Shown one piece after another: positions 2,859 to 50,414 of a DNA stretch of 50,962 bases; position 1 is the first letter of the stretch; every line of letters begins with the position of its first letter. Source of the DNA: Octopus bimaculoides (Eukaryota); NCBI RefSeq assembly GCF_001194135.2, contig NC_069009.1, forward strand, positions 3,833,572 to 3,884,533, written 5' to 3'. The translations under genes and the position numbers were made by a program. The notes beneath the pieces are model-generated. The model was not told where the DNA came from. It was given only the letters and a program-made list of their open reading frames with translations, and made no database searches.

Positions 2859-2914
<56 letters not shown>

Positions 2915-4458
2915 CTGTGTTTGTCCATCCTCCATCGGTTGACAACCAATGCTGGTGTGTTTATGTCCCCATAACTTAGCAGTTTGGCAAAAAAGGACCG
3001 ATAGAATAAGTACTAGGCTTACAAAGAATATGTCCTTGGGTTGATTTCTTTGACTTTAAGGCAGTGCTCTCGCATGGCCACAGTCAAATGACTGAAACAA
3101 GAATATATATACGTGGCGTTAGGAAGGGCATCCAGCTGTAGAAACTCTGCCAGATCAGATTGGAGCCTGGTGTAGCTATCTGGTTTCACCAGTCCTCAGT
3201 CAAATCGTCCAACCCATGCTAGCATGGAAAGTGGACGTTAAACGATGATGATGATGATATATGTATACTAGACTAGACCGCCTGTGACCCATTGGGTCAC
3301 CTGGAAAGTCTGAGTTTCCTAGCAACGGAGTTTTGTTTAATGGGTTTTTTTTCCCTCTTCCAGGTTATTTCACATGCTTTCAATGAATGTGACATCAAAA
3401 TCACATGTAAAGTCCTTTCCTTGGAAAAGAAAGATTTGGCTGCTATTTCTTGCATGCTCTGCCACCACATAAGAGCTGGGTCCTTTATCACAAATAGCTG
3501 TTATGTGGTAGCAGAGTGTGCTAGAAATAGCAGCCAAATCTTTGGAGCTGAGATATGTTGAATTCACTGGAAAAACCCATGCGAAAAAATTATTTCACAC
3601 TGAGGTTACAAACGGGTCTTTTATGAAATATTTACCATATTTTTAAAGTCATTTTTACTTTTAAATATTTTTTAAATAAGCCAAAAAAAATTTTTGTAAT
3701 GGTATTCACTTAAAAATAATTTTAAAAAATATTAAAATATTGGCTGTTTAAAGAAAGTTAAAATATAAATACTTACTGTACAAGCAACTTAAATTTTTGA
3801 AATCACATTCACTTAAAAATATTTCTAAATGATTTTAAAAATATTGTTTAAGTCAAAAGTCGATTTTTTATTCTTAAAGAGTGATAGAGAAAGAGAGCGA
3901 AGACTATGTGTGTGTATATGTCACAGATAGCATATGTGTGTTTGTGTTGATTGACATGCCATGCATTCATTATGTATGTGCGTAAGTGTGTTGACGTTAC
4001 AGAAGCCATGTTTTTTTCGTCAAGAAATAACAAATAAAAATTGTGTTTAATTGTTTTCATTAGTAGAGGTCCAAATATCACAAAACCTCATACTGCACTG
4101 CATAAAGTATGAAAATATATATGTAAAAAAAATTAAGATAAAATATACTATTTCTGAGATATTTCGGGAACAAACATCTTCTCGAGTTTTAGTATCATTA
4201 AGATGTATATAATGTGTGTGTATACTTGGAAAGAAGTGAAGGTGGGTGACAGGAGGCGCATCTGGTCGTAGATAATCTACCTCAACAAATTCTGTCTGAC
4301 CCATACATGCATGGAAAAGTGGACATTAAAACGATGATGGTGACCCCCGATTATTATAAAGGCCATATCAATGCTGTGTCTAGTTGAGGGTGCTGATGAG
4401 AGATGAGCTTTATGAATACAAAAAAACCCCCAAAAAACGTTAACTATGCCTCACTCAC

Positions 4459-10836: not shown

Positions 10837-11625
10837 CATCATCATCATCGTTTAACGTCCGCTTTCCATGCTAGCATGGGTTGGACGATTTGACTGAGGA
10901 CTGGTGAAACCGGATGGCAACACCAGGCTCCAATCTGATTTGGCAGAGTTTCTACAGCTGGATGCCCTTCCTAACGCCAACCACTCAGAGTGTAGTGGCT
11001 GCTTTTACGTGTCACCCGCACGAAGGCCAGTCAGGCAGTACTGGCAACGGCCACGCTCAGAATGGTGTATTTTATGTGCCACCTGCACAAGAGCCAGTCC
11101 AGGGGCCCTGGCAACANNNNNNNNNNNNNNNNNNNNNNNNNNNNNNNNNNNNNNNNNNNNNNNNNNNNNNNNNNNNNNNNNNNNNNNNNNNNNNNNNNNN
11201 NNNNNNNNNNNNNNNNNNNNNNNNNNNNNNNNNNNNNNNNNNNNNNNNNNNNNNNNNNNNNNNNNNNNNNNNNNNNNNNNNNNNNNNNNNNNNNNNNNNN
11301 NNNNNNNNNNNNNNNNNNNNNNNNNNNNNNNNNNNNNNNNNNNNNNNNNNNNNNNNNNNNNNNNNNNNNNNNNNNNNNNNNNNNNNNNNNNNNNNNNNNN
11401 NNNNNNNNNNNNNNNNNNNNNNNNNNNNNNNNNNNNNNNNNNNNNNNAAATGGTGTATTTTATGTGCCACCTGCACAAGAGCCAGTCCGGGGGCACTGGC
11501 AACGATCTCGCTCGAAAATGCTACGAAGGCCAGTCAGGCGGTACTGGCAACGGCCACGCTCAAAATGGTGTATTTTATGTGCCACCTGCACAAGAGCCAG
11601 TCCAGGGGCCCTGGCAACAAACGAA
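10837..11625 (-). mobile_element. RTE 3'UTR copy with internal ~115-bp tandem array spanning a gap
   Basis: Same family as 27712-28430; units on both sides of gap 11117-11447. Confidence 0.7.
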
Positions 11626-11701
11626 ATCCACTATTTTTTCTTCCCAAGTAAAACATACTCGTAACAGTACACATACACTCACAAACACACAGCCTACTCA
11701 C

Positions 11702-11884
11702 CTGTCGATCCTTTTCCAGAATCCTGCATCAACTCTTTCCTCGAGGTCTTCCGCCCAGCATACCTGGTATCTGTGTCAGACAACAGTGAAGCAGCTTGTC
11801 TCTTCAGCTTCGTTGATTTCTGTATCTGCTCACCATCCTTCGCATCATCTTCTGTGCCATGGATGCTGAGCTGTGCTGTTGTAT
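11702..11884 (-). CDS. AATF: AATF coding exon 2
   Basis: ttacag| acceptor and G|gtgagt donor; 183 nt, phase 1-1; KLKRQAASLLSDTDTRYAGRKTSRKEL matches the AATF motif IRKLASASLLDTDKRYCGKTTSRK. Confidence 0.93.
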
Positions 11885-13950: not shown

Positions 13951-14508
13951 ATACAGACGAACATCTTTACTCTTTTACATGTTTCAGTCATTTGACTGTG
14001 GCCATGCTGGAGCACCGCCTTTTAGTGGAGCCGATCGACCCCAGGACTTATTCTTTGGAAGCCTAGTACTTATACTATCCGTTTCTTTTNNNNNNNNNNC
14101 TCACAAGGCTTTGGTTGGCCCGAGGCTATAGTAGAAGACACTTGTCCAAGGTGCCATGCAGTGGGACTGAACCCGGAACCATGTGGTTGGTAAGCAAGCT
14201 ACTTACCACACAGCCACTCCTATGCGTGTGTGTGTATTTTACTAGTCAGTAGACAGCTGACATGACTTCAATCATCCTGGCAGCTACCGAGCATGTTCTG
14301 CAAATTACGGTTCTCCCACTCCCCTCCTTTAACCTCTTGGACACACACACACACCTTCCCCTTCAATCACTTTCCTGAACTTGTTCACATCCTCGTCGCC
14401 CCTGCACAACTCTTTGCCTTCATCACCTTGCCAATTCTCCTCAAATACTCCACCACTTCTTCTTCAGACAACACAAAGTCCGAAAAAGAAGAATTCAACC
14501 CTCCATTT

Positions 14509-23576: not shown

Positions 23577-23934
23577 GTAAGTATTTATTTTATCTCTGTA
23601 AAGTGCTGGTGCCACGTAAAAAGCATCCTGTCCACACCGTAAAATGGTTGTTGTTTGGAAGGGCAATCCAGTTGTAAAGACCATGCCAAAACTAACCCGC
23701 CTGGGCTTGTGCCATGTAAAAACGCACTAAGCATTTCGTCCAGCGTGCTAACATTTCGTCCAGCGTGCCACCTTAATAATAATGATAATTTCAAATTTTT
23801 GGCACAAGGCCGGCAAGCCTAGGGGAGGGCTAAGTCGATTACATTGACCCCCACCAATGCTCAACTAGTACTTGCTTATTGACCCCAAAAAGTTGAGTGT
23901 AGGCCTGTTGGGGCAAATGAAATCGAAATTGAAC

Positions 23935-24408
23935 CAAATTCGATGACTGGCACCCGTGCCAGTGGTGCGCTGACAGCTCCATCCAAGTGGGATCACTTGC
24001 CAGAGCAGCGGTCTGGCTTCTGTGCCGGTGGCACATAAAAAGCACCATTTGAGCGTGATCGTTACCAGCGTCGTCTTACTGGCACTTGTGCTGGTGGCAG
24101 GTGAACAAAACATTCGAGAGAGGTCGTTGCCAGTGCCGCTGGACTGACTCCTGTCCAGGTGGCATGTAAAAAACACCATTTGGGCATGGCTGGTGCCAGT
24201 ACCGCCTGACTGGCCCTCGTGCTGGTGGCACATAAAAGCATCCACTAAACTCTCTGAGTGGTTGGCATTAGGAAGGGCATCCAGCTGTAGAAACTCTGCC
24301 AGATCAGATTGGAGCCTGGTGCAGCCATCTGGTTCGCCAGTCCTCAGTCAAATCGTGCAACCCATGCTAGCATGGAAAGCAGACATTAAACGATGATGAT
24401 GATGATCC
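23935..24408 (+). mobile_element. RTE 3'UTR copy
   Basis: Shared UTR and (GAT)n tail. Confidence 0.65.
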
Positions 24409-24956
24409 TTGTGGCAATTTAAGGAATTGCCCAGGGAGTGTATAAGCTTATTAATCATGTAGTAAGCTACAAAATTCTTACATTCTCTCGGTTTCCTGTA
24501 ATTCATGGTTCCATCAGACAAAATCAAAAAGGCAAGGGAGGACAAGCTTGATTCAGTTTCCCCTTTACCAAATCCACTTACAAGGCTTTTGTTGGTCCAT
24601 GATTATAGTAGAAGACACTTGCCCNNNNNNNNNNNNNNNNNNNNNNNNNNNNNNNNNNNNNNNNNNNNNNNNNNNNNNNNNNNNNNNNNNNNNNNNNNNN
24701 NNNNNNNNNNNNNNNNNNNNNNNNNNNNNNNNNNNNNNNNNNNNNNNNNNNNNNNNNNNNNNNNNNNNNNNNNNNNNNNNNNNNNNNNNNNNNNNNNNNN
24801 NNNNNNNNNNNNNNNNNNNNNNNNNNNNNNNNNNNNNNNNNNNNNNNNNNNNNNNNNNNNNNNNNNNNNNNNNNNNNNNNNNNNNNNNNNNNNNNNNNNN
24901 NNNNNNNNNNNNNNNNNNNNNNNNNNNNNNNNNNNNNNNNNNNNNNNNNNNNNNNN

Positions 24957-25120
24957 CTTCAGTTTCTCATTGGCGACAGGGGCACCAACAGCCCCTACAA
25001 CTACTCCTGCGGCTGCCACTGGTATGGCTGCCCCTGTCATAGCTGCTCTCCCTGTTATTACCACAGCTGATTCTGGGTCAGCTTTCAGTTTCACTTCCCA
25101 GGCCACCAGCACCACCACAG
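24957..25120 (+). CDS. NUP62: NUP62 exon, 5' part hidden in gap 24625-24956
   Basis: FSFSLATGAPTAPTTT...AFSFTSQATSTTT, Thr/Ala-rich; donor G|gtaaga. Confidence 0.8.
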
Positions 25121-25492
25121 GTAAGATGTCTTTGTTTCATGTGTTTGCTTATCTCTCTCTATCCTTTTACTTGTTTCTGTGATTTGGACTATGGTCGTGC
25201 TGGAGCAGTACCCTGAAGGGTTTTAGTCAAACAAAATCGACCCCAGTTTTTTTATCTTTCATCTTTTACTTGCTTTAGTCATTAAGCTATGGCCAGGCTG
25301 GGGCACTGCCGTGTAAGAATTTTTAGTCAAAGGAATTGGCTCCAGTACTTCATTTTCCTTTTTTTTAAGTGTGGTGCTTGTTTTATTGATATCTTTGGCT
25401 GAACCACTAAGTTACTGGGACATAAACACTGACACTAGTTGTCAAGCAGTGGTGGTGGTCACACACACACATGAGAGGCTTGTTTTCAATTT

Positions 25493-26620: not shown

Positions 26621-26870
26621 TAGTCTCAGATGGTCATGCTTGGGGCTCCGGCCAGAAAGTGTAATGGCTGTTGCTTCTATCAGGACCATATGAAGGAAAT
26701 ACCTGAGGGCTTAAAGCCCCACAACCCTTCAAAGAATAATAGTTGGATGGAATGGAAGGCCTATGTAAACTTAGATTCCTGGTGTTGTGAAACGCACCTC
26801 AGCTGTGGCCACACACACACACCTGTTTTCATATGCTCCCTCTCACCTTCAATCTCTTCTAATATTTCAG

Positions 26871-27033
26871 CACCAGCAAGCAAGCCTTCTTTCATATTTT
26901 CAACAGCTGGGGCAGCTACCACTTCTGCCCCTGGTATTCCCTCTAACGTTAGCACAGGGCTAGCTCTCCCTGCTTCCACCACATCTTCTGGCTTTACCTT
27001 GGGCTCTAGTGCTGCCCCAACAACAACTGGAAG
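26871..27033 (+). CDS. NUP62: NUP62 Ser/Thr-rich exon
   Basis: tttcag| acceptor and AG|gtaaga donor; 163 nt, phase 1-2; PASKPSFIFST...GFTLGSS. Confidence 0.85.
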
Positions 27034-27273
27034 GTAAGAAATTTTTGTTTTGCATCATTCATTAATAAACAATCTATCACTGGTTGTCAGCAGCTGCTAC
27101 TCCCAAGAATTATAGGTGCTGGCATAGTTGTTTAGTGGTTAACAAGCTTGCTTCTTAACCCTGTGGTCTTGGGTTCAGTCCCACTGCACGGCACCTTATG
27201 CAAATATCTTATGCTGTAGTCCCTATACACATGCATAAATACACTCTCTCTCTCTCTGTTTCTTATTTTGCAG

Positions 27274-28780: not shown

Positions 28781-30322
28781 GTGAGTATTGCCTGTGTTAG
28801 TGTGTGTGTGTAACATGTTTATATGTGGGTGATAAGTTTGCTTCTCAACCATAAGGTTCTAGGTTCAGTCCCACTGTGTGGCACCTTGTGCATGTGGCTT
28901 CTGCTATAGCCCTGATCTGACCAAAACCTTGAGTGGATTTGGTAGGTGGAAACCGAAAAAAATCCTGCCATATATATATATATATATATTTTCTTTTGTT
29001 CTTTTACATGTGTCAGTCATTTGACTGCAGCCATGCTGGTGCACTGCTTGTAGTCGAGCAAATCGACCCCAGGACTTATTCTTTGTAAGCCTAGTACTCA
29101 TTCTATTGGCCTCTTTTGCTGAACCGCTAAGTAAAAAGGTGCAGTACATGTAATTCAAAGAGTGTGTGTGTGTGTGTGTGTATATACATGCGTTTTCTCC
29201 ATTCCTTAAATTTTTATATATATATATATATATATAATGTATGTGTGTATGGTGTCTTTGTGTNNNNNNNNNNNNNNNNNNNNNNNNNNNNNNNNNNNNN
29301 NNNNNNNNNNNNNNNNNNNNNNNNNNNNNNNNNNNNNNNNNNNNNNNNNNNNNNNNNNNNNNNNNNNNNNNNNNNNNNNNNNNNNNNNNNNNNNNNNNNN
29401 NNNNNNNNNNNNNNNNNNNNNNNNNNNNNNNNNNNNNNNNNNNNNNNNNNNNNNNNNNNNNNNNNNNNNNNNNNNNNNNNNNNNNNNNNNNNNNNNNNNN
29501 NNNNNNNNNNNNNNNNNNNNNNNNNNNNNNNNNNNNNNNNNNNNNNNNNNNNNNNNNNNNNNNNNNNNNNNNNNNNNNNNNNNNNNNNNNNNNNNNNNNN
29601 NNNNNNNNNNNNNNNNNNNNNNNNNNNNNNNNNNNNNNNNNNNNNNNNNNNNNNNNNNNNNNNNNNNNNNNNNNNNNNNNNNNNNNNNNNNNNNNNNNNN
29701 NNNNNNNNNNNNNNNNNNNNNNNNNNNNNNNNNNNNNNNNNNNNNNNNNNNNNNNNNNNNNNNNNNNNNNNNNNNNNNNNNNNNNNNNNNNNNNNNNNNN
29801 NNNNNNNNNNNNNNNNNNNNNNNNNNNNNNNNNNNNNNNNNNNNNNNNNNNNNNNNNNNNNNNNNNNNATCTATGTGTGTAACAATTTTAGAGTTCGGAT
29901 TCTAGAGTTAGGGTTAGGGTTAGGGGATTAATACGATATACACCGTTACAGCGCTAACTGTTTTCAACTGAATAGACGTCAGTGATTAGTAGAAATTATC
30001 GAAATAAGACAATTTTTTACATGACATAAATTCGAATACAAAAATTTTTTTATATTCTATAACACAAAATAGATAAGTATACAAAGTTTGAAAGTCTTTC
30101 CGTACCAAAAACACTACATAAAACATAAATGAAAACTGGTGCCCCCGTTTTAAAATAGATCCAAAATAAGTACCATTTAAATCCTGGGGGCGTTGCTATC
30201 AAATTATCCCCTCCCCCCGAAATTACTGGCCTTGTATCAAAATTTGAAACTGATATTACGTTTGAGTGAATGACCTGAATGCTAAAGGGTTAAATTGTGT
30301 TGTTTTTTGTTTCTTTAACCAG

Positions 30323-30434
30323 CTACCAATTGGCCGAAAGTATAGATGGTCAGCTGAAGAGAATGGTGCTTGATTTGAAGGAGATCATCGACCATCTGAA
30401 TACGACCAACACCAGTGAGGAGAATACAGATCCT
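30323..30434 (+). CDS. NUP62: NUP62 coiled-coil exon
   Basis: YQLAESIDGQLKRMVLDLKEIIDHLN...DP; phase 2-0; gtaagt donor. Confidence 0.96.
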
Positions 30435-30519
30435 GTAAGTAACTATTTCGGAAGGGGTCAGAGAGAAAGAGAGAGAGAGAGGTGTGTGATGGAGATGGAG
30501 ATGGGATGTCTTTTGTTTT

Positions 30520-33192: not shown

Positions 33193-34465
33193 AGAGTTGT
33201 TAAAGTTGCCTATTGTTTGGATTGAACCTGCTTCTTTTTGTTTGTCAAGTTTCATGCTTTTGTTGGCTGGTATAAGGCCAGATTGAGTTGGTGTTAGTGG
33301 TGATGGTCACCTTGAATGAATGGAGAGGTCATATCTGGGTACAACTGGTTGGATTGTCTCCCTTGTTACATGACCATGTGATTCAGTATACACCCTCATG
33401 TCCACTTCCAGTTGGGTTTTAATCCTTTTGATGCCAACCCACCTGTGAACTTCCCCTTTTAAAGTAATCCTAAGATCTTCCATCAAAATTTCATGTTAAT
33501 TTATGTTCCAAACACCAGCTTAATAATTAAGACCATTTTCAAAATTAGTTGCATCAAAGACAGTTGGTTTCCCTTTTGATGCTAACCCACTGAGACTGTT
33601 CCTTGGTTCTGTGATATAAATTTCCAGTTTAAAGAGATCTAAATCAAAAGTCTTCCATCAAAATTTCATGCCATTTTATGTTCCAAACATCAGCTTGATA
33701 ACGACAAAGTTATTTTACTAAATAGTTTTAAAGATTAATTGAAACAGTGTATTTCAACAGAAATATCGTAAGAAATAGGTTAAGGTGATCTAAAATCCTT
33801 TAATTGAAACAGGCGTATTTCNNNNNNNNNNNNNNNNNNNNNNNNNNNNNNNNNNNNNNNNNNNNNNNNNNNNNNNNNNNNNNNNNNNNNNNNNNNNNNN
33901 NNNNNNNNNNNNNNNNNNNNNNNNNNNNNNNNNNNNNNNNNNATAGCCTCGGGCCGACCAAAGCCTTGTGAGTGGATTTGATAGACGGAAACTGAAAGAA
34001 GCCCGTCGTATATATGTATGTATGTGTGTGTATATGTTTGCGTGTCTGTGTTTGACCCCCCCCCCTCCAGCATCACTTGACAACCGATGGTGGTGTGTTT
34101 ACGTCCCCGTAACTTATTGGTTCAGCTAAAGAGACCGATAGAATAAGTACTAGGCTTACAAAGAATAAGTCCTGGGGTCGATTGGCTCGACTAAAGGCGG
34201 TGCTCCAGCATGGCCACAGTCAAATAACTGAAACAACTATAAGAGTAAAAGAGATAACACGGATAGCAGAGCGCTTTCTTGAGTACTGTTTACAGAGGCT
34301 TTCAGCAGATGTGGATGGATCTGGTTTGATCAGGCTAGCTGATAGCCTCTTTAATCCTTTTGAGATTGCCCCTTGGTTCTATGATATAAATTTCCTGTTA
34401 ATTTATGTTCCAGATGTTGACAAGAACAGTTATTTTATTAAATTCTTCATTATTAACGGGACCCA

Positions 34466-45455: not shown

Positions 45456-47593
45456 NNNNNNNNNNNNNNNNNNNNNNNNNNNNNNNNNNNNNNNNNNNNN
45501 NNNNNNNNNNNNNNNNNNNNNNNNNNNNNNNNNNNNNNNNNNNNNNNNNNNNNNNNNNNNNNNNNNNNNNNNNNNNNNNNNNNNNNNNNNNNNNNNNNNN
45601 NNNNNNNNNNNNNNNNNNNNNNNNNNNNNNNNNNNNNNNNNNNNNNNNNNNNNNNNNNNNNNNNNNNNNNNNNNNNNNNNNNNNNNNNNNNNNNNNNNNN
45701 NNNNNNNNNNNNNNNNNNNNNNNNNNNNNNNNNNNNNNNNNNNNNNNNNNNNNNNNNNNNNNNNNNNNNNNNNNNNNNNNNNNNNNNNNNNNNNNNNNNN
45801 NNNNNNNNNNNNNNNNNNNNNNNNNNNNNNNNNNNNNNNNNNNNNNNNNNNNNNNNNNNNNNNNNNNNNNNNNNNNNNNNNNNNNNNNNNNNNNNNNNNN
45901 NNNNNNNNNNNNNNNNNNNNNNNNNNNNNNNNNNNNNNNNNNNNNNNNNNNNNNNNNNNNNNNNNNNNNNNNNNNNNNNNNNNNNNNNNNNNNNNNNNNN
46001 NNNNNNNNNNNNNNNNNNNNNNNNNNNNNNNNNNNNNNNNNNNNNNNNNNNNNNNNNNNNNNNNNNNNNNNNNNNNNNNNNNNNNNNNNNNNNNNNNNNN
46101 NNNNNNNNNNNNNNNNNNNNNNNNNNNNNNNNNNNNNNNNNNNNNNNNNNNNNNNNNNNNNNNNNNNNNNNNNNNNNNNNNNNNNNNNNNNNNNNNNNNN
46201 NNNNNNNNNNNNNNNNNNNNNNNNNNNNNNNNNNNNNNNNNNNNNNNNNNNNNNNNNNNNNNNNNNNNNNNNNNNNNTGTTTATTGCTCCTGAGCATCTG
46301 CCACATACAATATATATAATATATATATATACACACGTATCCATACATACATACATATACAAATATATATATATTTGTATACGTGTATATGAGTCTATAT
46401 GTATGTATACATGTGTGTGTGTGTGTGTGTATATATCATCACCATCATCAACATAATTTAACTTCCATTGTCCCATGCTGGTATGAGTTGGATTGGTTTG
46501 ACCAGGGCTGTTAACACCACTGTTAACATCATCACCACCACTACCATCACCAGCAACACCAGTATCACTTCCCATCACTCATCAACACAAAAACCACCAC
46601 CACTATCACATTCACCACTATCATAATTACCACTACCACTACCATCTTGACAACCACCACATCTACAGCACCCTCTACTATAACTCTAACACTAACATCT
46701 TGATTAATCCCCAAATGAAACTCAATCTGATGCCTCTACAAATCTTTTATTGCAGTGAAACCAGCCAGTTTTTCTGACCACCCCTCCAGAACTCCTTTTT
46801 CCTGGCATTGAAGCTACAGATTTTGGACGGACATAGTGAGCACATTTACAGTGGTAAGACTTGTTCTTCTTGCTGTCAAATACCCACTTTCTTCCAATCT
46901 AGAAAGGGGAAAATAAATCCCTTTTATCTCTGATACACAAATATGTTTGGATATATTAATCCCCATTTTGTGGATATAACGTCTTTGTTTACCAGATATA
47001 CACAAACCAGCTTTTTCTTCCTCATACAAAATGCAGTTTTCATAATACTTGTTCTTCTTGCTATCAAATAAACTGTTTCCAATCCCACAAAACCTTGCTT
47101 CTGGAGTCAAAAATTTACCCACTTCTTTTTTTTTTTTTTTTAGTCTCTGATACACAATTCTGCCTGGATATACAACTTCATCTTGTGGATATGCTGTTTT
47201 TTTTTTTTTCCTGCTGGATTTACTCATCCTGTTTCTTCTGATAAATTGTATGGAAAGTATAACCCTGTCTTCCAGAGGACAAAATAACATTCTTTCATCT
47301 GGAGAAAAAAAAACCCCCCAAAAAAACAAACATCTTTTATACTCAACACCCAACATCTAATTTTTTTCTGGATATACCAACACATTTCATGGACATACTA
47401 TCATTTGTAACAAATATATAATTTGTTCTTCAAGCAGGATATGCAGACTAATGTGTTTGCAGAAAAACTAATACTGTTATGTAATATACCTCTCGCAGTT
47501 TCACATTTCCTTCACCCATACAAACATATCTTTCGTTCCAGGCATACAGTTCTGTTTAAATATACAACCTTTTGTATATCCTGAAGGAACTGT

Positions 47594-47628
<35 letters not shown>

Positions 47629-48128
47629 TCAAATCTGTTTTAATATTACCTTGTTTTGCCTGTGATCATCTGAGGTTAAACAAAACATCAGCATCAACAT
47701 CCTACATACCTACATTAATATAAAATTTCATCATAATCTTTGAAACATTAACATTTGGGACACCATGAGAGACTTTTTCACCATATATTTCAAGTTGAAT
47801 TCTTCAGATCTTTTAGAGAAATCAACCAGACAGCATCGGTTCCATTGTGGATCGAAATGACATTTAGTAAGAAACCCAACCAAACAAAAACACATCAATT
47901 TTAGATTTTGCTTTAGTTTAAACAAAGTCGAATTAACATTCCTCAGGATGCTGACTTTATTACCCATGATACTTGTGCCATTTTCACTGGCGAACACTTA
48001 AATGCAATCCATTTATAATTTTCAATCAATGTAAAGCAAGCATAGGGCAAAGAAATACCTTACCGACTTTGTCAGACGAGGCTGCTTTGACAGCCACATC
48101 CGTCTGAACATTTGGATCCATTGACGCG

Positions 48129-49232
48129 ATGCACACTGAAGTATACACACATGCGTCGTATTCGTATTACTCGGAACCTCAGTATGTTCTTGCTTTGAAG
48201 ATCATTTCATTGGCTCTGATCATATTCACCGGTATTCTTGGCAACAGCATGGTTGTCTACACAATAATCAGAGACAAACGCTTACACCGGCCACCATTTT
48301 ATTACCTGGTCAGTCTGGCCATGTCAGATTTAGCTCGATCAGTGTTTTGCCTGCCTTTTGTATTAACCACTGTAATCCAGGGTTATGTGTGGGTGTATGG
48401 CGAGAACGCATGTATCCTGGTTGGCTTCACAAACACTTTTTTTATCTACAGTTCTGCCGTAACCTTTCTCCTTATATCAGGTGACAGATATGTCGGTGTG
48501 GTACAGACTCGCTTTTATCGACGCAAATGTGGCGGCCTGCTGTCACTTGCGTTCATCGTGTTTGGATGGGGTGTAGCATTTTTAGTGTCTTTCCCACCTA
48601 TCTTTGGGCTAGGTAGCTACACATTTGTGCCAAGTGAAGCTCAGTGCACATATTCACACACACACTACAGGTCAAATGATACGCTCGTCTTTTTATTAGT
48701 GTTTACATTCATAATGAGCCTGTCGCTGCTTCTTTATTACCGGATACTAATGTTTTTAAGAAACCATCGCAAAATGTACCCATTTTTCCATCAGCCAGCA
48801 CGTAGTAACAACTGGACGTTTCTAGGACCCGGCGCCAATGGACAGGCTTTAGTGAACTGGTTAAATGGTTTTACTGGATTCAGGCAAAACCCTTGGCTTA
48901 ATCCTATAGCAGCTGGTTTTCAAATGCCCCCACGACAACTTGGACGGACAGTCAACTTAAAAGTTGTGAAAGGGGAACACCTCAGTCGACTGTTTTTCAC
49001 TGTTACCCTTGTTTTCGACATCCTATGGGTCCCATATTTGGTATTGTCTTACTGGCAGGTTTTCGAGGTTTCCCACCAGCTGTCATCGACTTTCATTGGT
49101 GTGGCAGCATGGTGCAGCTATCTTGCAGTTGCTGTCAACCCGTTAGTATATCTCTGCTGTAGTGGCACTTTACGGAGAGCCTTTCGCCCGGAAATAGAAA
49201 GTTATTCAAAACGAGGTACTCTTAGAGAATAA
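48129..49232 (+). CDS. Intronless class A GPCR of the SREB family (GPR85/GPR27/GPR173-like), 367 aa
   Basis: 7 hydrophobic segments; GN (TM1), LAMSD (TM2), DRY, FPP, WVPY, NPLVY; SREB signatures RDKRLHRPPFYYL, EAQCT..H..YRSND and NWTFLGPGANGQALVNWLNGF; in-frame stop 24 nt upstream of the ATG. Confidence 0.93.
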   Translation: MHTEVYTHASYSYYSEPQYVLALKIISLALIIFTGILGNSMVVYTIIRDKRLHRPPFYYLVSLAMSDLARSVFCLPFVLTTVIQGYVWVYGENACILVGFTNTFFIYSSAVTFLLISGDRYVGVVQTRFYRRKCGGLLSLAFIVFGWGVAFLVSFPPIFGLGSYTFVPSEAQCTYSHTHYRSNDTLVFLLVFTFIMSLSLLLYYRILMFLRNHRKMYPFFHQPARSNNWTFLGPGANGQALVNWLNGFTGFRQNPWLNPIAAGFQMPPRQLGRTVNLKVVKGEHLSRLFFTVTLVFDILWVPYLVLSYWQVFEVSHQLSSTFIGVAAWCSYLAVAVNPLVYLCCSGTLRRAFRPEIESYSKRGTLRE

Positions 49233-49549
49233 ATGGTATTGGAAATAGATTTTGAAGGTACTTGAAACGAAGCTGTGTAAGAGAATTAATAATGGTAAAA
49301 ATAATAATAACTGGAAATAGGAAAGGTTTCCATAATGAGCTATCGTCAGAAGAATTGTTGTGTTGGGTAATTAAAAAAGCTATTCAGAATGAAGTAGTAA
49401 GAGAGAGAATATATATATATGTATATATATATAGTATATAATTGGAAATGACATACCGTATGAAATCTGAAACTGGAAAACAGTGTAAAAGCTACTTAAG
49501 TGTGTATGTGTGTGTGTTCACATGTGCACATGCATATGGTAAATGAAAA

Positions 49550-49603
<54 letters not shown>

Positions 49604-50414
49604 TACGCATGCAAATATGTGTACAAATATGTGTTTTGGCTGACACATATGTGCATATATGTATGCTCAGGTGGTTATAGGAATGCTGCAGTAATTTATA
49701 TATATATATATTGATATTATATGAATGTGGATGTGTGACCTCATCTTGGAGGAATGTAAAAGAATGGAGCAGTGACATAAGAAATGGCAGTATGTGACAC
49801 AAAGTCAAGGTTTGTGAGCCAATAGAAATACGATTGATTTCAACCAGGATAACAGTTTGAGAAAGTGGTGAATAGTTGAGTTAGAGAGAAGAGCGCAGTG
49901 GAAGTGACTTCTTTGGGAAATGATTTACATAACGGGTTGGCCAGAGCAAGGATTTTGTGAATAATTTCATTACGGGTGGGGCGGGGCAGGGCAGGGTGCT
50001 GTTGTGGAACCTCTGTCCCCCGACCGATGCGAGGTGTCTCGTGGGTACTGGTGCCATACGAGAGCATTGCGGGTTTTGGCAAGGTTTTATAATACTGCTG
50101 TTATATGCAGGGACTGGGATAACTAAAAATGCATATGTAAGGGTTGGCATGTGCGCTGCAACCCGATACACGTAAATACACTCGGACGCATACACGGAAG
50201 CATGCGCATAGAACATATGCACATGAAAATAGACACACTCACAATAGATGCCAGACAGATTTTAAATTAATGCAAGTAGTATATACATGTATGTACATAT
50301 TGTCTATGTGTGTATATATTATGTATGTGTGAATGTTAGTATGGATGTCTGTGTACATATATATATATGTATATGAATATATATATATATATACACACGC
50401 ATGAGTAAATATAA

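What the first reader, a model, noticed from the sequence alone, without database searches (positions are those of the whole stretch)
48129..49232. SREB-family orphan GPCR in an apparent cephalopod, keeping canonical activation motifs
Seen: intronless 367-aa 7TM ORF with SREB signatures, including the ICL3 motif NWTFLGPGANGQALVNWLNGF (GPR85: NWTFHGPGASGQAAANWLAGF) and ECL2 QCT..H..YRSND. Established: SREBs (GPR27/85/173) are brain-expressed orphan receptors originally described as vertebrate-specific; GPR85 has TRY and NPFVC in place of DRY and NPxxY. Seen: this protein has DRY and NPLVY, an unusual Asp in TM6 (FDILWVP) and no N-terminal glycosylation sequon. Inference: SREB predates the bilaterian split, and this copy may be closer to the ancestral signalling state and useful for deorphanisation. 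Automated annotations may already label such genes GPR85-like.
Basis: partly seen in the sequence, partly recalled or inferred. Interest (0 to 1): 0.75.

Follow-up and report, generated by a model that had tools for sequence, protein, structure and literature searches.

The report
Octopus SREB orphan receptor gene, already catalogued
This is a real, strongly conserved single-exon gene for the Octopus bimaculoides counterpart of the vertebrate brain orphan receptors GPR27/85/173; the same protein is already in a published SREB family tree, so what may be new is only that it, like other protostome copies, keeps the standard GPCR activation motifs that vertebrate copies lost.

Summary

The window is Octopus bimaculoides (100% match to GCA_001194135.2). 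O. sinensis encodes the identical protein (40 synonymous, 0 non-synonymous differences). A third octopod gives dN/dS = 0.008.

SREB membership holds:
- 100% bootstrap for the SREB clade against the nearest non-SREB GPCRs.
- The clade's shared derived features are present: the ICL3 motif NWTF.GPGA.GQA..NW..GF, the ECL2 motif E.QC...H..Y..ND, Leu6.47 and no Pro5.50.

The novelty is largely gone. The exact sequence (UniProt A0A0L8I0D3, OCBIM_22000086mg) is in the "SREB_cluster" dataset and tree of Yañez-Guerra, Thiel & Jékely 2022 (MBE), who already concluded an urbilaterian origin.

I found one point in no paper. D3.49 and Y7.53 are the rule in protostome SREBs (48/51 and 35/52) and are lost in all sampled deuterostomes. 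Parsimony puts DRY and NPxxY at the SREB root, and octopus keeps that full set, as does Priapulus. Asp6.45 is shared with other lophotrochozoan SREBs. Ligand, coupling and expression remain untested.

The parts
48129..49232 (+). Complete single-exon CDS (367 codons plus TAA) of the Octopus bimaculoides SREB orthologue (UniProt A0A0L8I0D3 / OCBIM_22000086mg)
   Evidence: ORF; Pfam 7tm_1 E=5e-44. Collinear end to end with 360-367-aa relatives. Identical protein in O. sinensis with 40 synonymous / 0 non-synonymous differences, and dN/dS 0.008 against a third octopod. Verbatim in the published dataset.
48105..48107 (+). In-frame TGA stop 8 codons upstream of the start ATG
   Evidence: Upstream in-frame translation ...TSV*TFGSIDA-M. 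Stops occur in all three frames of the 420 nt upstream, so an N-terminal coding extension is unlikely.
48483..48491 (+). D119-R120-Y121: canonical DRY (3.49-3.51) at the cytoplasmic end of TM3
   Evidence: Sequence. D3.49 in 48/51 protostome-type SREBs against T in 113/119 vertebrate SREBs. D and Y are the inferred states at the SREB root.
48636..48680 (+). ECL2 SREB signature EAQCTYSHTHYRSND, including Cys173 (partner of Cys95 at 3.25) and sequon N183
   Evidence: Pattern E.QC...H..Y..ND present in SREB-clade hits and absent from the non-SREB tail. C95 and C173 are invariant. Modelled as a beta-hairpin, E164-167 and E172-175.
48807..48872 (+). ICL3 SREB signature NNWTFLGPGANGQALVNWLNGF (residues 227-248)
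   Evidence: The most conserved longer segment between octopus and vertebrate SREBs: 65-74% identity against 28-33% overall (the 8-residue ICL1 reaches 75% against GPR85 only). Present across the SREB-clade hits down to E of about 1e-30 in recognisable form; complete in molluscan, annelid, nemertean and deuterostome members but degenerate after the NW.F core in several divergent ones (e.g. spider, Priapulus). Absent below that apart from one borderline hit. Low AF2 confidence, pLDDT about 50-55.
49014..49034 (+). TM6 FDILWVP: F6.44, D6.45, L6.47 (in place of the Cys of CWxP), W6.48, P6.50
   Evidence: L6.47 is shared by the SREB clade, whereas the nearest other GPCRs have C in 72/111. D6.45 occurs in 13 protostome-type SREBs and is not among the common residues in vertebrates or in the outgroup.
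49137..49151 (+). N337-P-L-V-Y341: canonical NPxxY (7.49-7.53) in TM7
   Evidence: Sequence. Y7.53 in 35/52 protostome-type SREBs against C or S in 114/116 vertebrate SREBs. N7.49 is kept in only 6/52 protostome-type sequences. N and Y are the inferred root states.
47556..48128 (+). Conserved 5' flank (probable 5' UTR/promoter; non-coding)
   Evidence: 7.3% mismatches against O. sinensis and 8.0% against the third octopod, compared with 15% and 24% at synonymous sites. Stops in all frames.
49233..49717 (+). 3' flank (probable 3' UTR); an AATAAA overlaps the stop codon at 49228 and an ATTAAA lies at 49370
   Evidence: 8.1% mismatches against O. sinensis; poly(A)-signal hexamers. Transcript ends were not determined.

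Best explanation
Shown: window 48129-49232 (+) is the single-exon gene for the Octopus bimaculoides pro-orthologue of the three vertebrate SREB orphan receptors (GPR27, GPR85, GPR173). Yañez-Guerra et al. 2022 describe invertebrate SREBs as single-copy; copy number was not tested here. It is a functional class A GPCR gene under extreme purifying selection. It carries the features that mark the whole SREB clade: the ICL3 motif NWTF.GPGA.GQA..NW..GF, the ECL2 motif E.QC...H..Y..ND, Leu6.47 and no Pro5.50. Unlike deuterostome SREBs, it keeps the complete canonical microswitch set: D2.50, D3.49-R3.50-Y3.51, Y5.58, F6.44, W6.48, P6.50 and N7.49-P-x-x-Y7.53. By parsimony that is the state of the ancestral bilaterian SREB.

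Inferred: because the microswitches are intact, the octopus receptor most likely works as a conventional ligand-activated GPCR. Agonist binding in the 7TM pocket would be followed by outward movement of TM6 and engagement of a heterotrimeric G protein through R3.50, Y5.58 and Y7.53. The ligand is unknown and is unlikely to be a classical monoamine, because position 3.32 is Asn, not Asp. The invariant ICL3 motif is most likely a family-specific cytoplasmic docking or regulatory site, kept for more than 550 Myr.
For: Gene reality and selection:
- ORF and in-frame upstream stop; 7tm_1 E=5e-44.
- Identical protein in O. sinensis (40 synonymous / 0 non-synonymous differences); dN/dS 0.008 against a third octopod.

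Organism: the window is 100% identical to GCA_001194135.2 CM046629.1, which is O. bimaculoides.

Family membership:
- An exhaustive HMMER scan of 1.84 billion representatives finds only 38 clusters at E<=1e-30. The full-length ones among them carry the SREB signatures in at least recognisable form; the GPCR tail below does not, apart from one borderline hit.
- Named hits are GPR85/GPR173 of chiton, abalone, clam, hemichordates, amphioxus, hagfish and others.
- NJ tree (61 taxa, 325 columns, 200 bootstraps): SREB clade 100, window inside a mollusc clade 71, deuterostome SREBs 86, vertebrates 100.
- The same protein is placed in the SREB cluster in a published ML analysis.

Motifs:
- Census of microswitch positions.
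- Named protostomes in the published set: Priapulus DRY/NPIVY, Araneus DRY, Platynereis DRH/VPLVY.
- Fitch reconstruction gives D3.49, Y3.51, N7.49 and Y7.53 at the SREB root.

Structure and conservation:
- The AF2 model is a confident 7TM bundle, pTM 0.81; its nearest solved folds are aminergic, adenosine and orexin receptors.
- The ICL3 motif is the most conserved longer segment between octopus and human, 74% against 33% overall.
Against: - No functional data exist for any invertebrate SREB. Coupling, ligand and expression were not tested here.
- Even vertebrate SREBs have no accepted ligand or pathway. Proximity labelling found no G proteins near them.
- Y7.53 is not strictly kept in protostome SREBs: F, H, C, M or N in about a third, mostly bivalves. 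N7.49 is usually Cys, and Y3.51 is usually His. The family as a whole therefore tolerates erosion of these switches, so retention in octopus could be passive.
- The SREB-wide lack of Pro5.50 and Cys6.47 already departs from the canonical activation machinery.
- AF2 gives no confident structure for ICL3.
Confidence: 0.6

Rival explanations
1. Same gene and same family, but it acts as an atypical, G protein-independent receptor, as has been proposed for vertebrate SREBs. It would work as a scaffold or trafficking partner through the invariant intracellular loops. DRY and NPxxY would then be retained ancestral characters with no special signalling meaning.
For: - The intracellular loops, not the pocket, are the most conserved parts: ICL3 motif 65-74% and ICL1 up to 75% identity to vertebrate SREBs, against 21-50% for the TM helices.
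- BioID on human SREBs found EPB41L2, SLC3A2 and LRBA but no G proteins, and the authors consider non-canonical function.
- Y7.53, N7.49 and Y3.51 are repeatedly lost within protostome SREBs.
Against: - D3.49 is kept in 48/51 protostome-type sequences, R3.50 in 51/51, Y5.58 in 51/52 and W6.48 in 52/53. That level of retention over more than 500 Myr is hard to explain without the canonical conformational switch.
- Constitutive Gi coupling has been reported for GPR27.
Confidence: 0.28
2. Same gene, but a ligand-independent, constitutively active receptor whose output is set by expression level.
For: - Constitutive activity has been reported for some vertebrate SREBs, and several 'inverse agonists' have been described.
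- The N-terminus is short (about 17 residues before TM1) and unglycosylated.
Against: - An intact D3.49-R3.50 pair normally stabilises the inactive state. The constitutive-activity argument in the literature rests precisely on loss of D3.49, and octopus has not lost it.
- ECL2 and pocket-lining positions are conserved, which suggests a ligand.
- GPR85 was reported to lack constitutive activity.
Confidence: 0.1
3. It is not an SREB but a divergent monoamine (for example 5-HT2-like) receptor, as some automated annotations of its molluscan relatives imply.
For: - The best solved-structure hits are 5-HT2A/2C and adrenergic receptors at E of about 1e-20.
- Two Plakobranchus relatives are named '5-hydroxytryptamine receptor 2a/2b'.
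Against: - Human GPR85 hits the same aminergic structures at the same level, 4e-21, so this is simply the family's nearest outgroup.
- Position 3.32 is Asn, not the amine-binding Asp.
- Pro5.50 and Cys6.47 are absent, and the SREB-specific ICL3 and ECL2 motifs are present.
- SREB monophyly has 100% bootstrap with 5-HT1D-like receptors outside.
Confidence: 0.02

Closest known systems
The same protein as already catalogued: UniProt A0A0L8I0D3 (OCBIM_22000086mg), 'SREB_cluster' entry in Yañez-Guerra, Thiel & Jékely 2022, Mol Biol Evol 39:msac051 (PMC9004410)
   Same: All 367 residues are identical. It was placed in the SREB clade with monoamine receptors as outgroup, and used to infer the urbilaterian origin of SREBs.
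   Different: Nothing differs in sequence. The paper's main text does not discuss activation motifs, selection, gene structure or the TM6 Asp.
Vertebrate SREB2 / GPR85 (human P60893)
   Same: - 33% identity overall, but 74% across the ICL3 motif and 75% in ICL1.
- Same ECL2 motif, Leu6.47, no Pro5.50, the Cys3.25-ECL2 disulfide pair, a long ICL3 and similar length (370 against 367 aa).
- Extreme within-lineage conservation.
- An intronless coding sequence in vertebrates (my own knowledge).
   Different: - GPR85 has T3.49 (TRY) and C7.53 (NPFVC); octopus has DRY and NPLVY.
- GPR85 has Leu6.45, octopus has Asp.
- GPR85 has Gly at 3.32, octopus has Asn.
- GPR85 has N-terminal sequons and ends in ...PYCVI; octopus has no N-terminal sequon and ends in ...GTLRE.
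Other protostome SREBs (chiton Liolophura 'GPR173', Haliotis 'GPR85', Lottia, Biomphalaria, Platynereis, Owenia, Lineus, Priapulus, Araneus)
   Same: - 37-55% identity to the lophotrochozoan members measured (alignment figures 54% chiton, 50% Haliotis); the two ecdysozoans were compared only by motif.
- D3.49 and mostly Y7.53.
- The ICL3 and ECL2 motifs, though the ICL3 motif is degenerate after NW.F in Priapulus and Araneus.
- Asp6.45 in chiton, Platynereis and several others.
   Different: - Most lophotrochozoans have DRH rather than DRY, and Cys, Val or Thr at 7.49.
- Of the named species, only octopus and Priapulus combine DRY with NPxxY; two unnamed sequences also do (the 84%-identical relative P0002 and P0041).
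- Gastropod copies carry long Ser/Thr-rich N-termini, and bivalve copies carry extended C-termini.
Monoamine receptors (5-HT1/2, adrenergic): nearest non-SREB class A group
   Same: - General 7TM fold and microswitches.
- Best solved-structure and fold matches.
- The closest cluster in the published CLANS analysis.
   Different: Octopus SREB has no Asp3.32, no Pro5.50 and no Cys6.47, and it has the SREB-specific loops. Monoamine-type receptors fall outside the clade at 100% bootstrap.

Membership tests
SREB orthogroup (GPR27/GPR85/GPR173 and their invertebrate pro-orthologues) | Falls inside the SREB clade in a phylogeny rooted with the nearest other class A GPCRs | tested here: met
   NJ tree, 61 taxa, 200 bootstraps: SREB monophyly 100%. 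The same protein sits in the published ML SREB cluster.
SREB orthogroup (GPR27/GPR85/GPR173 and their invertebrate pro-orthologues) | Conserved ICL3 motif NWTF.GPGA.GQA..NW..GF | tested here: met
   NNWTFLGPGANGQALVNWLNGF at residues 227-248. Present across SREB-clade hits and absent from the non-SREB tail apart from one borderline hit. 74% identical to GPR85.
SREB orthogroup (GPR27/GPR85/GPR173 and their invertebrate pro-orthologues) | ECL2 motif E.QC...H..Y..ND with the conserved disulfide Cys | tested here: met
   EAQCTYSHTHYRSND at residues 170-184. C95 and C173 are invariant.
SREB orthogroup (GPR27/GPR85/GPR173 and their invertebrate pro-orthologues) | Leu instead of Cys in CWxP (6.47), and no proline in TM5 (5.50) | tested here: met
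   LWVP, and Ile at 5.50. No SREB sampled has P5.50, against 92/111 in the outgroup. L6.47 predominates in SREBs, whereas C is found in 72/111 of the outgroup. Both are described as SREB features.
SREB orthogroup (GPR27/GPR85/GPR173 and their invertebrate pro-orthologues) | Exceptional sequence conservation ('super-conserved') | tested here: met
   0 non-synonymous against 40 synonymous differences between O. bimaculoides and O. sinensis; dN/dS 0.008 against a third octopod.
SREB orthogroup (GPR27/GPR85/GPR173 and their invertebrate pro-orthologues) | Intronless coding sequence | tested here: met
   Uninterrupted ORF, collinear end to end with its relatives. The amphioxus entry spans 1080 nt for 360 codons. 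The intronless state in vertebrates is from my own knowledge.
SREB orthogroup (GPR27/GPR85/GPR173 and their invertebrate pro-orthologues) | Expression in brain / nervous system | not testable with these tools
   No expression data were available. The Logan contigs could not be assigned to RNA or DNA.
Vertebrate-type SREB (as originally defined: atypical motifs) | TRY in place of DRY (T3.49) | tested here: not met
   Octopus has D119. T3.49 is limited to chordates, with S in hemichordates and E in echinoderms. It is a derived chordate character, not a feature of the bilaterian family.
Vertebrate-type SREB (as originally defined: atypical motifs) | NPxxC (or NPxxS) in place of NPxxY | tested here: not met
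   Octopus has Y341. C7.53 is inferred to arise on the deuterostome stem.
Vertebrate-type SREB (as originally defined: atypical motifs) | C-terminal ...PYCV[IM] tail | tested here: not met
   Octopus ends ...KRGTLRE, whereas GPR85, GPR173 and fish GPR27 end in PYCVI or PYCVM.
Biogenic amine receptors | Asp3.32 as counter-ion for the amine | tested here: not met
   Asn102 at 3.32. N is the inferred SREB root state.

The most novel reading that the evidence does not exclude
The atypical TRY/NPxxC state that has made vertebrate SREBs so hard to assay would be a deuterostome innovation. The ancestral bilaterian SREB would have been a conventional G protein-coupled receptor, and octopus (with Priapulus) would preserve that full ancestral switch set. 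If so, the octopus receptor should give normal G protein read-outs. It could then be used to find the conserved SREB ligand and, through D119T/Y341C and the reverse human substitutions, to explain what the vertebrate receptors lost or gained.
Probability: 0.35. Interest if true: 0.6.

Novelty: already known. Interest (0 to 1): 0.3.

Why it matters
GPR27, GPR85 and GPR173 remain unpaired or disputed orphans (IUPHAR 2026). They are linked to brain size, schizophrenia risk, insulin regulation and reproduction. Their lack of DRY and NPxxY has led some authors to ask whether they signal through G proteins at all. Part of the field still states that they are absent from invertebrates, although the 2022 MBE paper shows otherwise.

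The useful point is comparative rather than a discovery of the gene. Protostome orthologues, with octopus among the most complete, share the SREB-specific loops and pocket framework but keep the canonical switches. That gives a practical handle for deorphanisation and for testing what the motif changes do. The gene itself and its family assignment are already in the literature.

Tried and rejected
- Word-indexed homologue searches with the octopus protein and with a molluscan/hemichordate profile did not reach vertebrate SREBs. I solved this by querying with human GPR85 and with the exhaustive representative scan.
- Solved structures: no SREB structure is in the PDB copy. GPR85 and the octopus protein both hit only aminergic or peptide receptors at about 1e-20.
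- The first AF2 job was lost. The second gave a confident 7TM core but pLDDT of about 50-55 for ICL3, so it gives no structural insight into the signature motif. Foldseek against the PDB returned generic class A receptors only.
- An 87-aa ORF is called immediately upstream of the receptor in all contigs of the 84%-identical relative. It is low-complexity, and the octopus upstream region has stops in every frame. I rejected it as a spurious gene call rather than a conserved uORF or upstream exon.
- The Logan contigs of relatives end in microsatellites and are collinear with genomic DNA. They could not be used as transcript or expression evidence.
- Rfam scan of the window: nothing.
- Pfam on six other long ORFs of the window: nothing.
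- Literature searches for molluscan or cephalopod SREB, or for invertebrate SREB motifs, returned nothing beyond the 2022 paper. One broad query was uninformative because of my choice of terms.
- Protostome-type SREBs were not recovered as a supported monophyletic group (18% bootstrap). The ancestral-state inference therefore rests on outgroup comparison and parsimony, not on a resolved internal root.
Full report
**1. Observation**

The ORF listing returns an ORF at 48129..49232 on the + strand: 367 aa with an ATG start. An in-frame TGA lies at 48105-48107, eight codons upstream. The 420 nt upstream carry stops in all three frames.
- GDRYV, residues 118-122.
- EAQCTYSHTHYRSND, residues 170-184.
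- NNWTFLGPGANGQALVNWLNGF, residues 227-248.
- FDILWVP, residues 296-302.
- NPLVY, residues 337-341.

The N-terminus has no N-x-S/T sequon. The only sequons are N183 in ECL2 and the intracellular N228. Pfam gives 7tm_1 at E=5e-44 over residues 38-341.

**2. Source organism and reality of the gene**

The exact protein is encoded on two NCBI chromosome-scale assemblies. The window is 100% identical over 4,685 nt to GCA_001194135.2 (CM046629.1). The octopus genome literature identifies that assembly as Octopus bimaculoides and GCA_006345805.1 as O. sinensis.
- The O. sinensis copy differs at 40 synonymous and 0 non-synonymous sites.
- A third octopod (Logan contig L001) differs at 63 synonymous and 2 non-synonymous sites (H179Y, R349Q), giving dN/dS = 0.008.
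- A more distant relative (P0002, 84% aa identity, 88 Logan contigs) aligns only across the CDS, with synonymous sites saturated. It is presumably another cephalopod, but that is not shown.

This is a functional gene under very strong constraint.

**3. Family assignment**

The closest named relatives are 'probable GPR85/GPR173' of chiton (54%), abalone (50%), clam and hemichordates (37%).

An exhaustive HMMER scan of 1.84 billion cluster representatives finds only 38 clusters at E<=1e-30, followed by a long tail of ordinary class A receptors. Aligning these hits shows the SREB signatures across the clade down to about 1e-30, in at least recognisable form. They are absent below that, apart from one borderline hit. 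The signatures are the ECL2 motif E.QC...H..Y..ND, the ICL3 motif NWTF.GPGA.GQA..NW..GF, and LWxP in TM6. The ICL3 motif is complete in molluscan, annelid, nemertean and deuterostome members but degenerate after the NW.F core in several divergent ones, such as the spider and Priapulus.

Cluster look-ups name members from amphioxus, hagfish, teleosts, turtle, brittle star, crinoid, the annelid Owenia and the nemertean Lineus. Tail sequences are 5-HT1D-like receptors, peropsin and similar.

Human GPR85 as I recalled it proved 100% identical to the mammalian GPR85 cluster. It retrieved named GPR85, GPR173 and GPR27 sequences.

An NJ tree (61 taxa, 325 well-occupied columns, Kimura distances, 200 bootstraps) gives these supports:

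| Clade | Bootstrap % |
|---|---|
| All SREBs | 100 |
| Window + P0002 | 100 |
| Window inside a mollusc clade | 71 |
| Deuterostome SREBs | 86 |
| Vertebrate SREBs | 100 |

Protostome-type SREBs as a single group are not supported (18%).

No SREB structure exists in the PDB copy. GPR85 and the octopus protein both find aminergic receptors at about 1e-20. An AF2 model has a confident 7TM core (pTM 0.81) and matches generic class A folds.

**4. What is already known**

Breton et al. 2021 described SREBs as vertebrate-only, with TRY, LWxP and NPxxC. Yañez-Guerra, Thiel & Jékely 2022 then reported single-copy SREBs in cephalochordates, ambulacrarians, ecdysozoans and lophotrochozoans. They concluded an urbilaterian origin.

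Their Supplementary Figure 5 lists 'Obim (Octopus bimaculoides)'. Their Supplementary File 8 contains, under 'SREB_cluster', UniProt A0A0L8I0D3 / OCBIM_22000086mg, with a sequence identical to the window ORF over all 367 residues.

Automated annotation also names molluscan relatives GPR85/GPR173.

**5. What I could not find in the literature: the motif states**

The main text of the 2022 paper does not discuss activation motifs. Searches for molluscan or cephalopod SREB, or for invertebrate SREB motifs, found nothing else. [quoted passage not shown]

My census across the clade:

| Position | Protostome-type SREBs | Deuterostome SREBs | Nearest non-SREB GPCRs |
|---|---|---|---|
| 3.49 | D 48/51 (E in 3) | T 113/119 in vertebrates; T amphioxus, S hemichordates, E echinoderms | - |
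| 7.53 | Y 35/52 | C or S 114/116 in vertebrates; C in amphioxus, hemichordates, starfish and brittle star | - |
| 5.50 | no Pro | no Pro | P 92/111 |
| 6.47 | Leu predominant | Leu predominant | C 72/111 |

Named protostomes in the published dataset agree:
- Priapulus: DRY and NPIVY.
- Araneus: DRY and TPFAF.
- Centruroides: DRY (sequence truncated).
- Lottia and Biomphalaria: DRH and CPxxY.
- Platynereis: DRH and VPLVY.
- Acanthaster (a deuterostome, for contrast): ERY and NPILC.

Fitch parsimony on my tree puts D3.49, Y3.51, L6.47, N7.49, Y7.53 and N3.32 at the SREB root, with C7.53 arising on the deuterostome stem and T3.49 in chordates. Octopus has the inferred root residue at all six positions. 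Most other lophotrochozoans have changed Y3.51 to His and N7.49 to Cys.

Asp at 6.45 is unusual for class A receptors. It is not among the common residues in the outgroup or in vertebrate SREBs. It recurs in 13 protostome-type SREBs, including chiton and Platynereis, and is reconstructed for the mollusc clade.

**6. Mechanism**

Shown: a class A 7TM protein with D2.50, DRY, Y5.58, F6.44, W6.48, P6.50 and NPxxY, the 3.25-ECL2 disulfide pair and an ECL2 hairpin in the model. Position 3.32 is Asn, so the pocket is not a classical amine site. The ICL3 motif is the most conserved longer segment between octopus and human (74% against 33% overall); ICL1 is next, at 75% to GPR85.

Inferred:
- Intact switches make conventional agonist-driven G protein coupling the most likely mode (about 0.6).
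- The main rival (about 0.3) is the atypical, partner-scaffolding role discussed for vertebrate SREBs. It is favoured by the loop-centred conservation, the BioID results and the repeated erosion of Y7.53, N7.49 and Y3.51 within protostomes.
- Constitutive, ligand-free activity is less likely because D3.49 is present.
- A monoamine-receptor identity is rejected.

**7. Verdict**

However, the gene and its SREB assignment are already known and published, down to the identical sequence. The residual value is a modest comparative point: canonical DRY and NPxxY are ancestral and retained in protostomes, and lost in deuterostomes. I did not find this stated anywhere. It makes a practical experiment obvious, namely to use octopus or Priapulus SREB, and reciprocal motif swaps with the human receptors, in standard transducer and ligand screens.

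Interest is 0.3. Novelty class: already known.

Noticed in passing
window 30297-30450 (+), with Thr/Ser/Ala/Gly-rich ORFs at about 24505-25182 and 26630-27037 (+): A Nup62 nucleoporin orthologue lies upstream on the same strand. The peptide SYQLAESIDGQLKRMVLDLKEIIDHLNTTNTSEENTDPV matches human NUP62 residues 433-471 (E=6e-9). The upstream low-complexity ORFs look like its FG-repeat exons. Pfam did not detect the short exon.
   Followed up: partly
window 47556-48128 and 49233-49717: The roughly 500-nt flanks of the receptor ORF differ by only 7-8% between O. bimaculoides and O. sinensis, whereas synonymous sites inside the ORF differ by 15% (24% against the third octopod). The flanks evolve at about half the synonymous rate, which suggests constrained UTR or regulatory sequence. 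Alternatively, synonymous sites may be unusually fast.
   Followed up: partly
window about 10904-11869, 23865-24245 (-), 43511-44237; also about 2888-3101, 13966-14089, 28973-29132, 34008-34252, 39488-39725: Interspersed repeats. One element repeatedly yields ORF fragments such as GNGHAQNGVFYVPPAQEPVQGPWQ. A roughly 240-nt element next to the O. sinensis locus (L002 4864-5100) matches at least five places in the window at 85-92%. Both are probably SINE-like cephalopod repeats and were not classified.
   Followed up: no
whole window, e.g. 6.4-7.3 kb, 11.1-11.5 kb, 29.2-29.9 kb, 38.1-38.6 kb, 43.6-44.1 kb, 45.4-46.3 kb: Many runs of N (assembly gaps), often flanked by (TA)n or (CA)n microsatellites. 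There is strong strand-asymmetric low-complexity sequence at 34-38 kb, with GC skew up to 0.57.
   Followed up: no
relatives P0018/P0019 (Plakobranchus ocellatus) and P0233 (Platysternon megacephalum): Public names are misleading. Two sea-slug SREB orthologues are annotated '5-hydroxytryptamine receptor 2a/2b' although they carry the SREB ICL3 and ECL2 motifs. A turtle SREB cluster carries the name '30S ribosomal protein S14'.
   Followed up: partly
relatives P0006, P0024, P0027-P0033 (gastropods) and P0009, P0016, P0017, P0020 (bivalve-type): Gastropod SREBs have 130-300-residue Ser/Thr/Asn-rich N-terminal extensions. Bivalve-type SREBs have extended C-termini ending in ...ELSV...ELEV or ...ELTV, which look like PDZ ligands. 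Octopus, chiton and allies end in ...x-x-E, and vertebrates in ...PYCV[IM].
   Followed up: no
loci L004-L011 (contigs of P0002), immediately upstream of the receptor ORF: Gene callers place an 87-aa ORF ending 8 nt before the receptor ATG in every contig. It is low-complexity and has no counterpart in octopus, so it is most likely a spurious call.
   Followed up: yes
literature: [quoted passage not shown] The 2022 finding of invertebrate SREBs, buried in a neuropeptide paper, has not fully reached the SREB field.
   Followed up: partly
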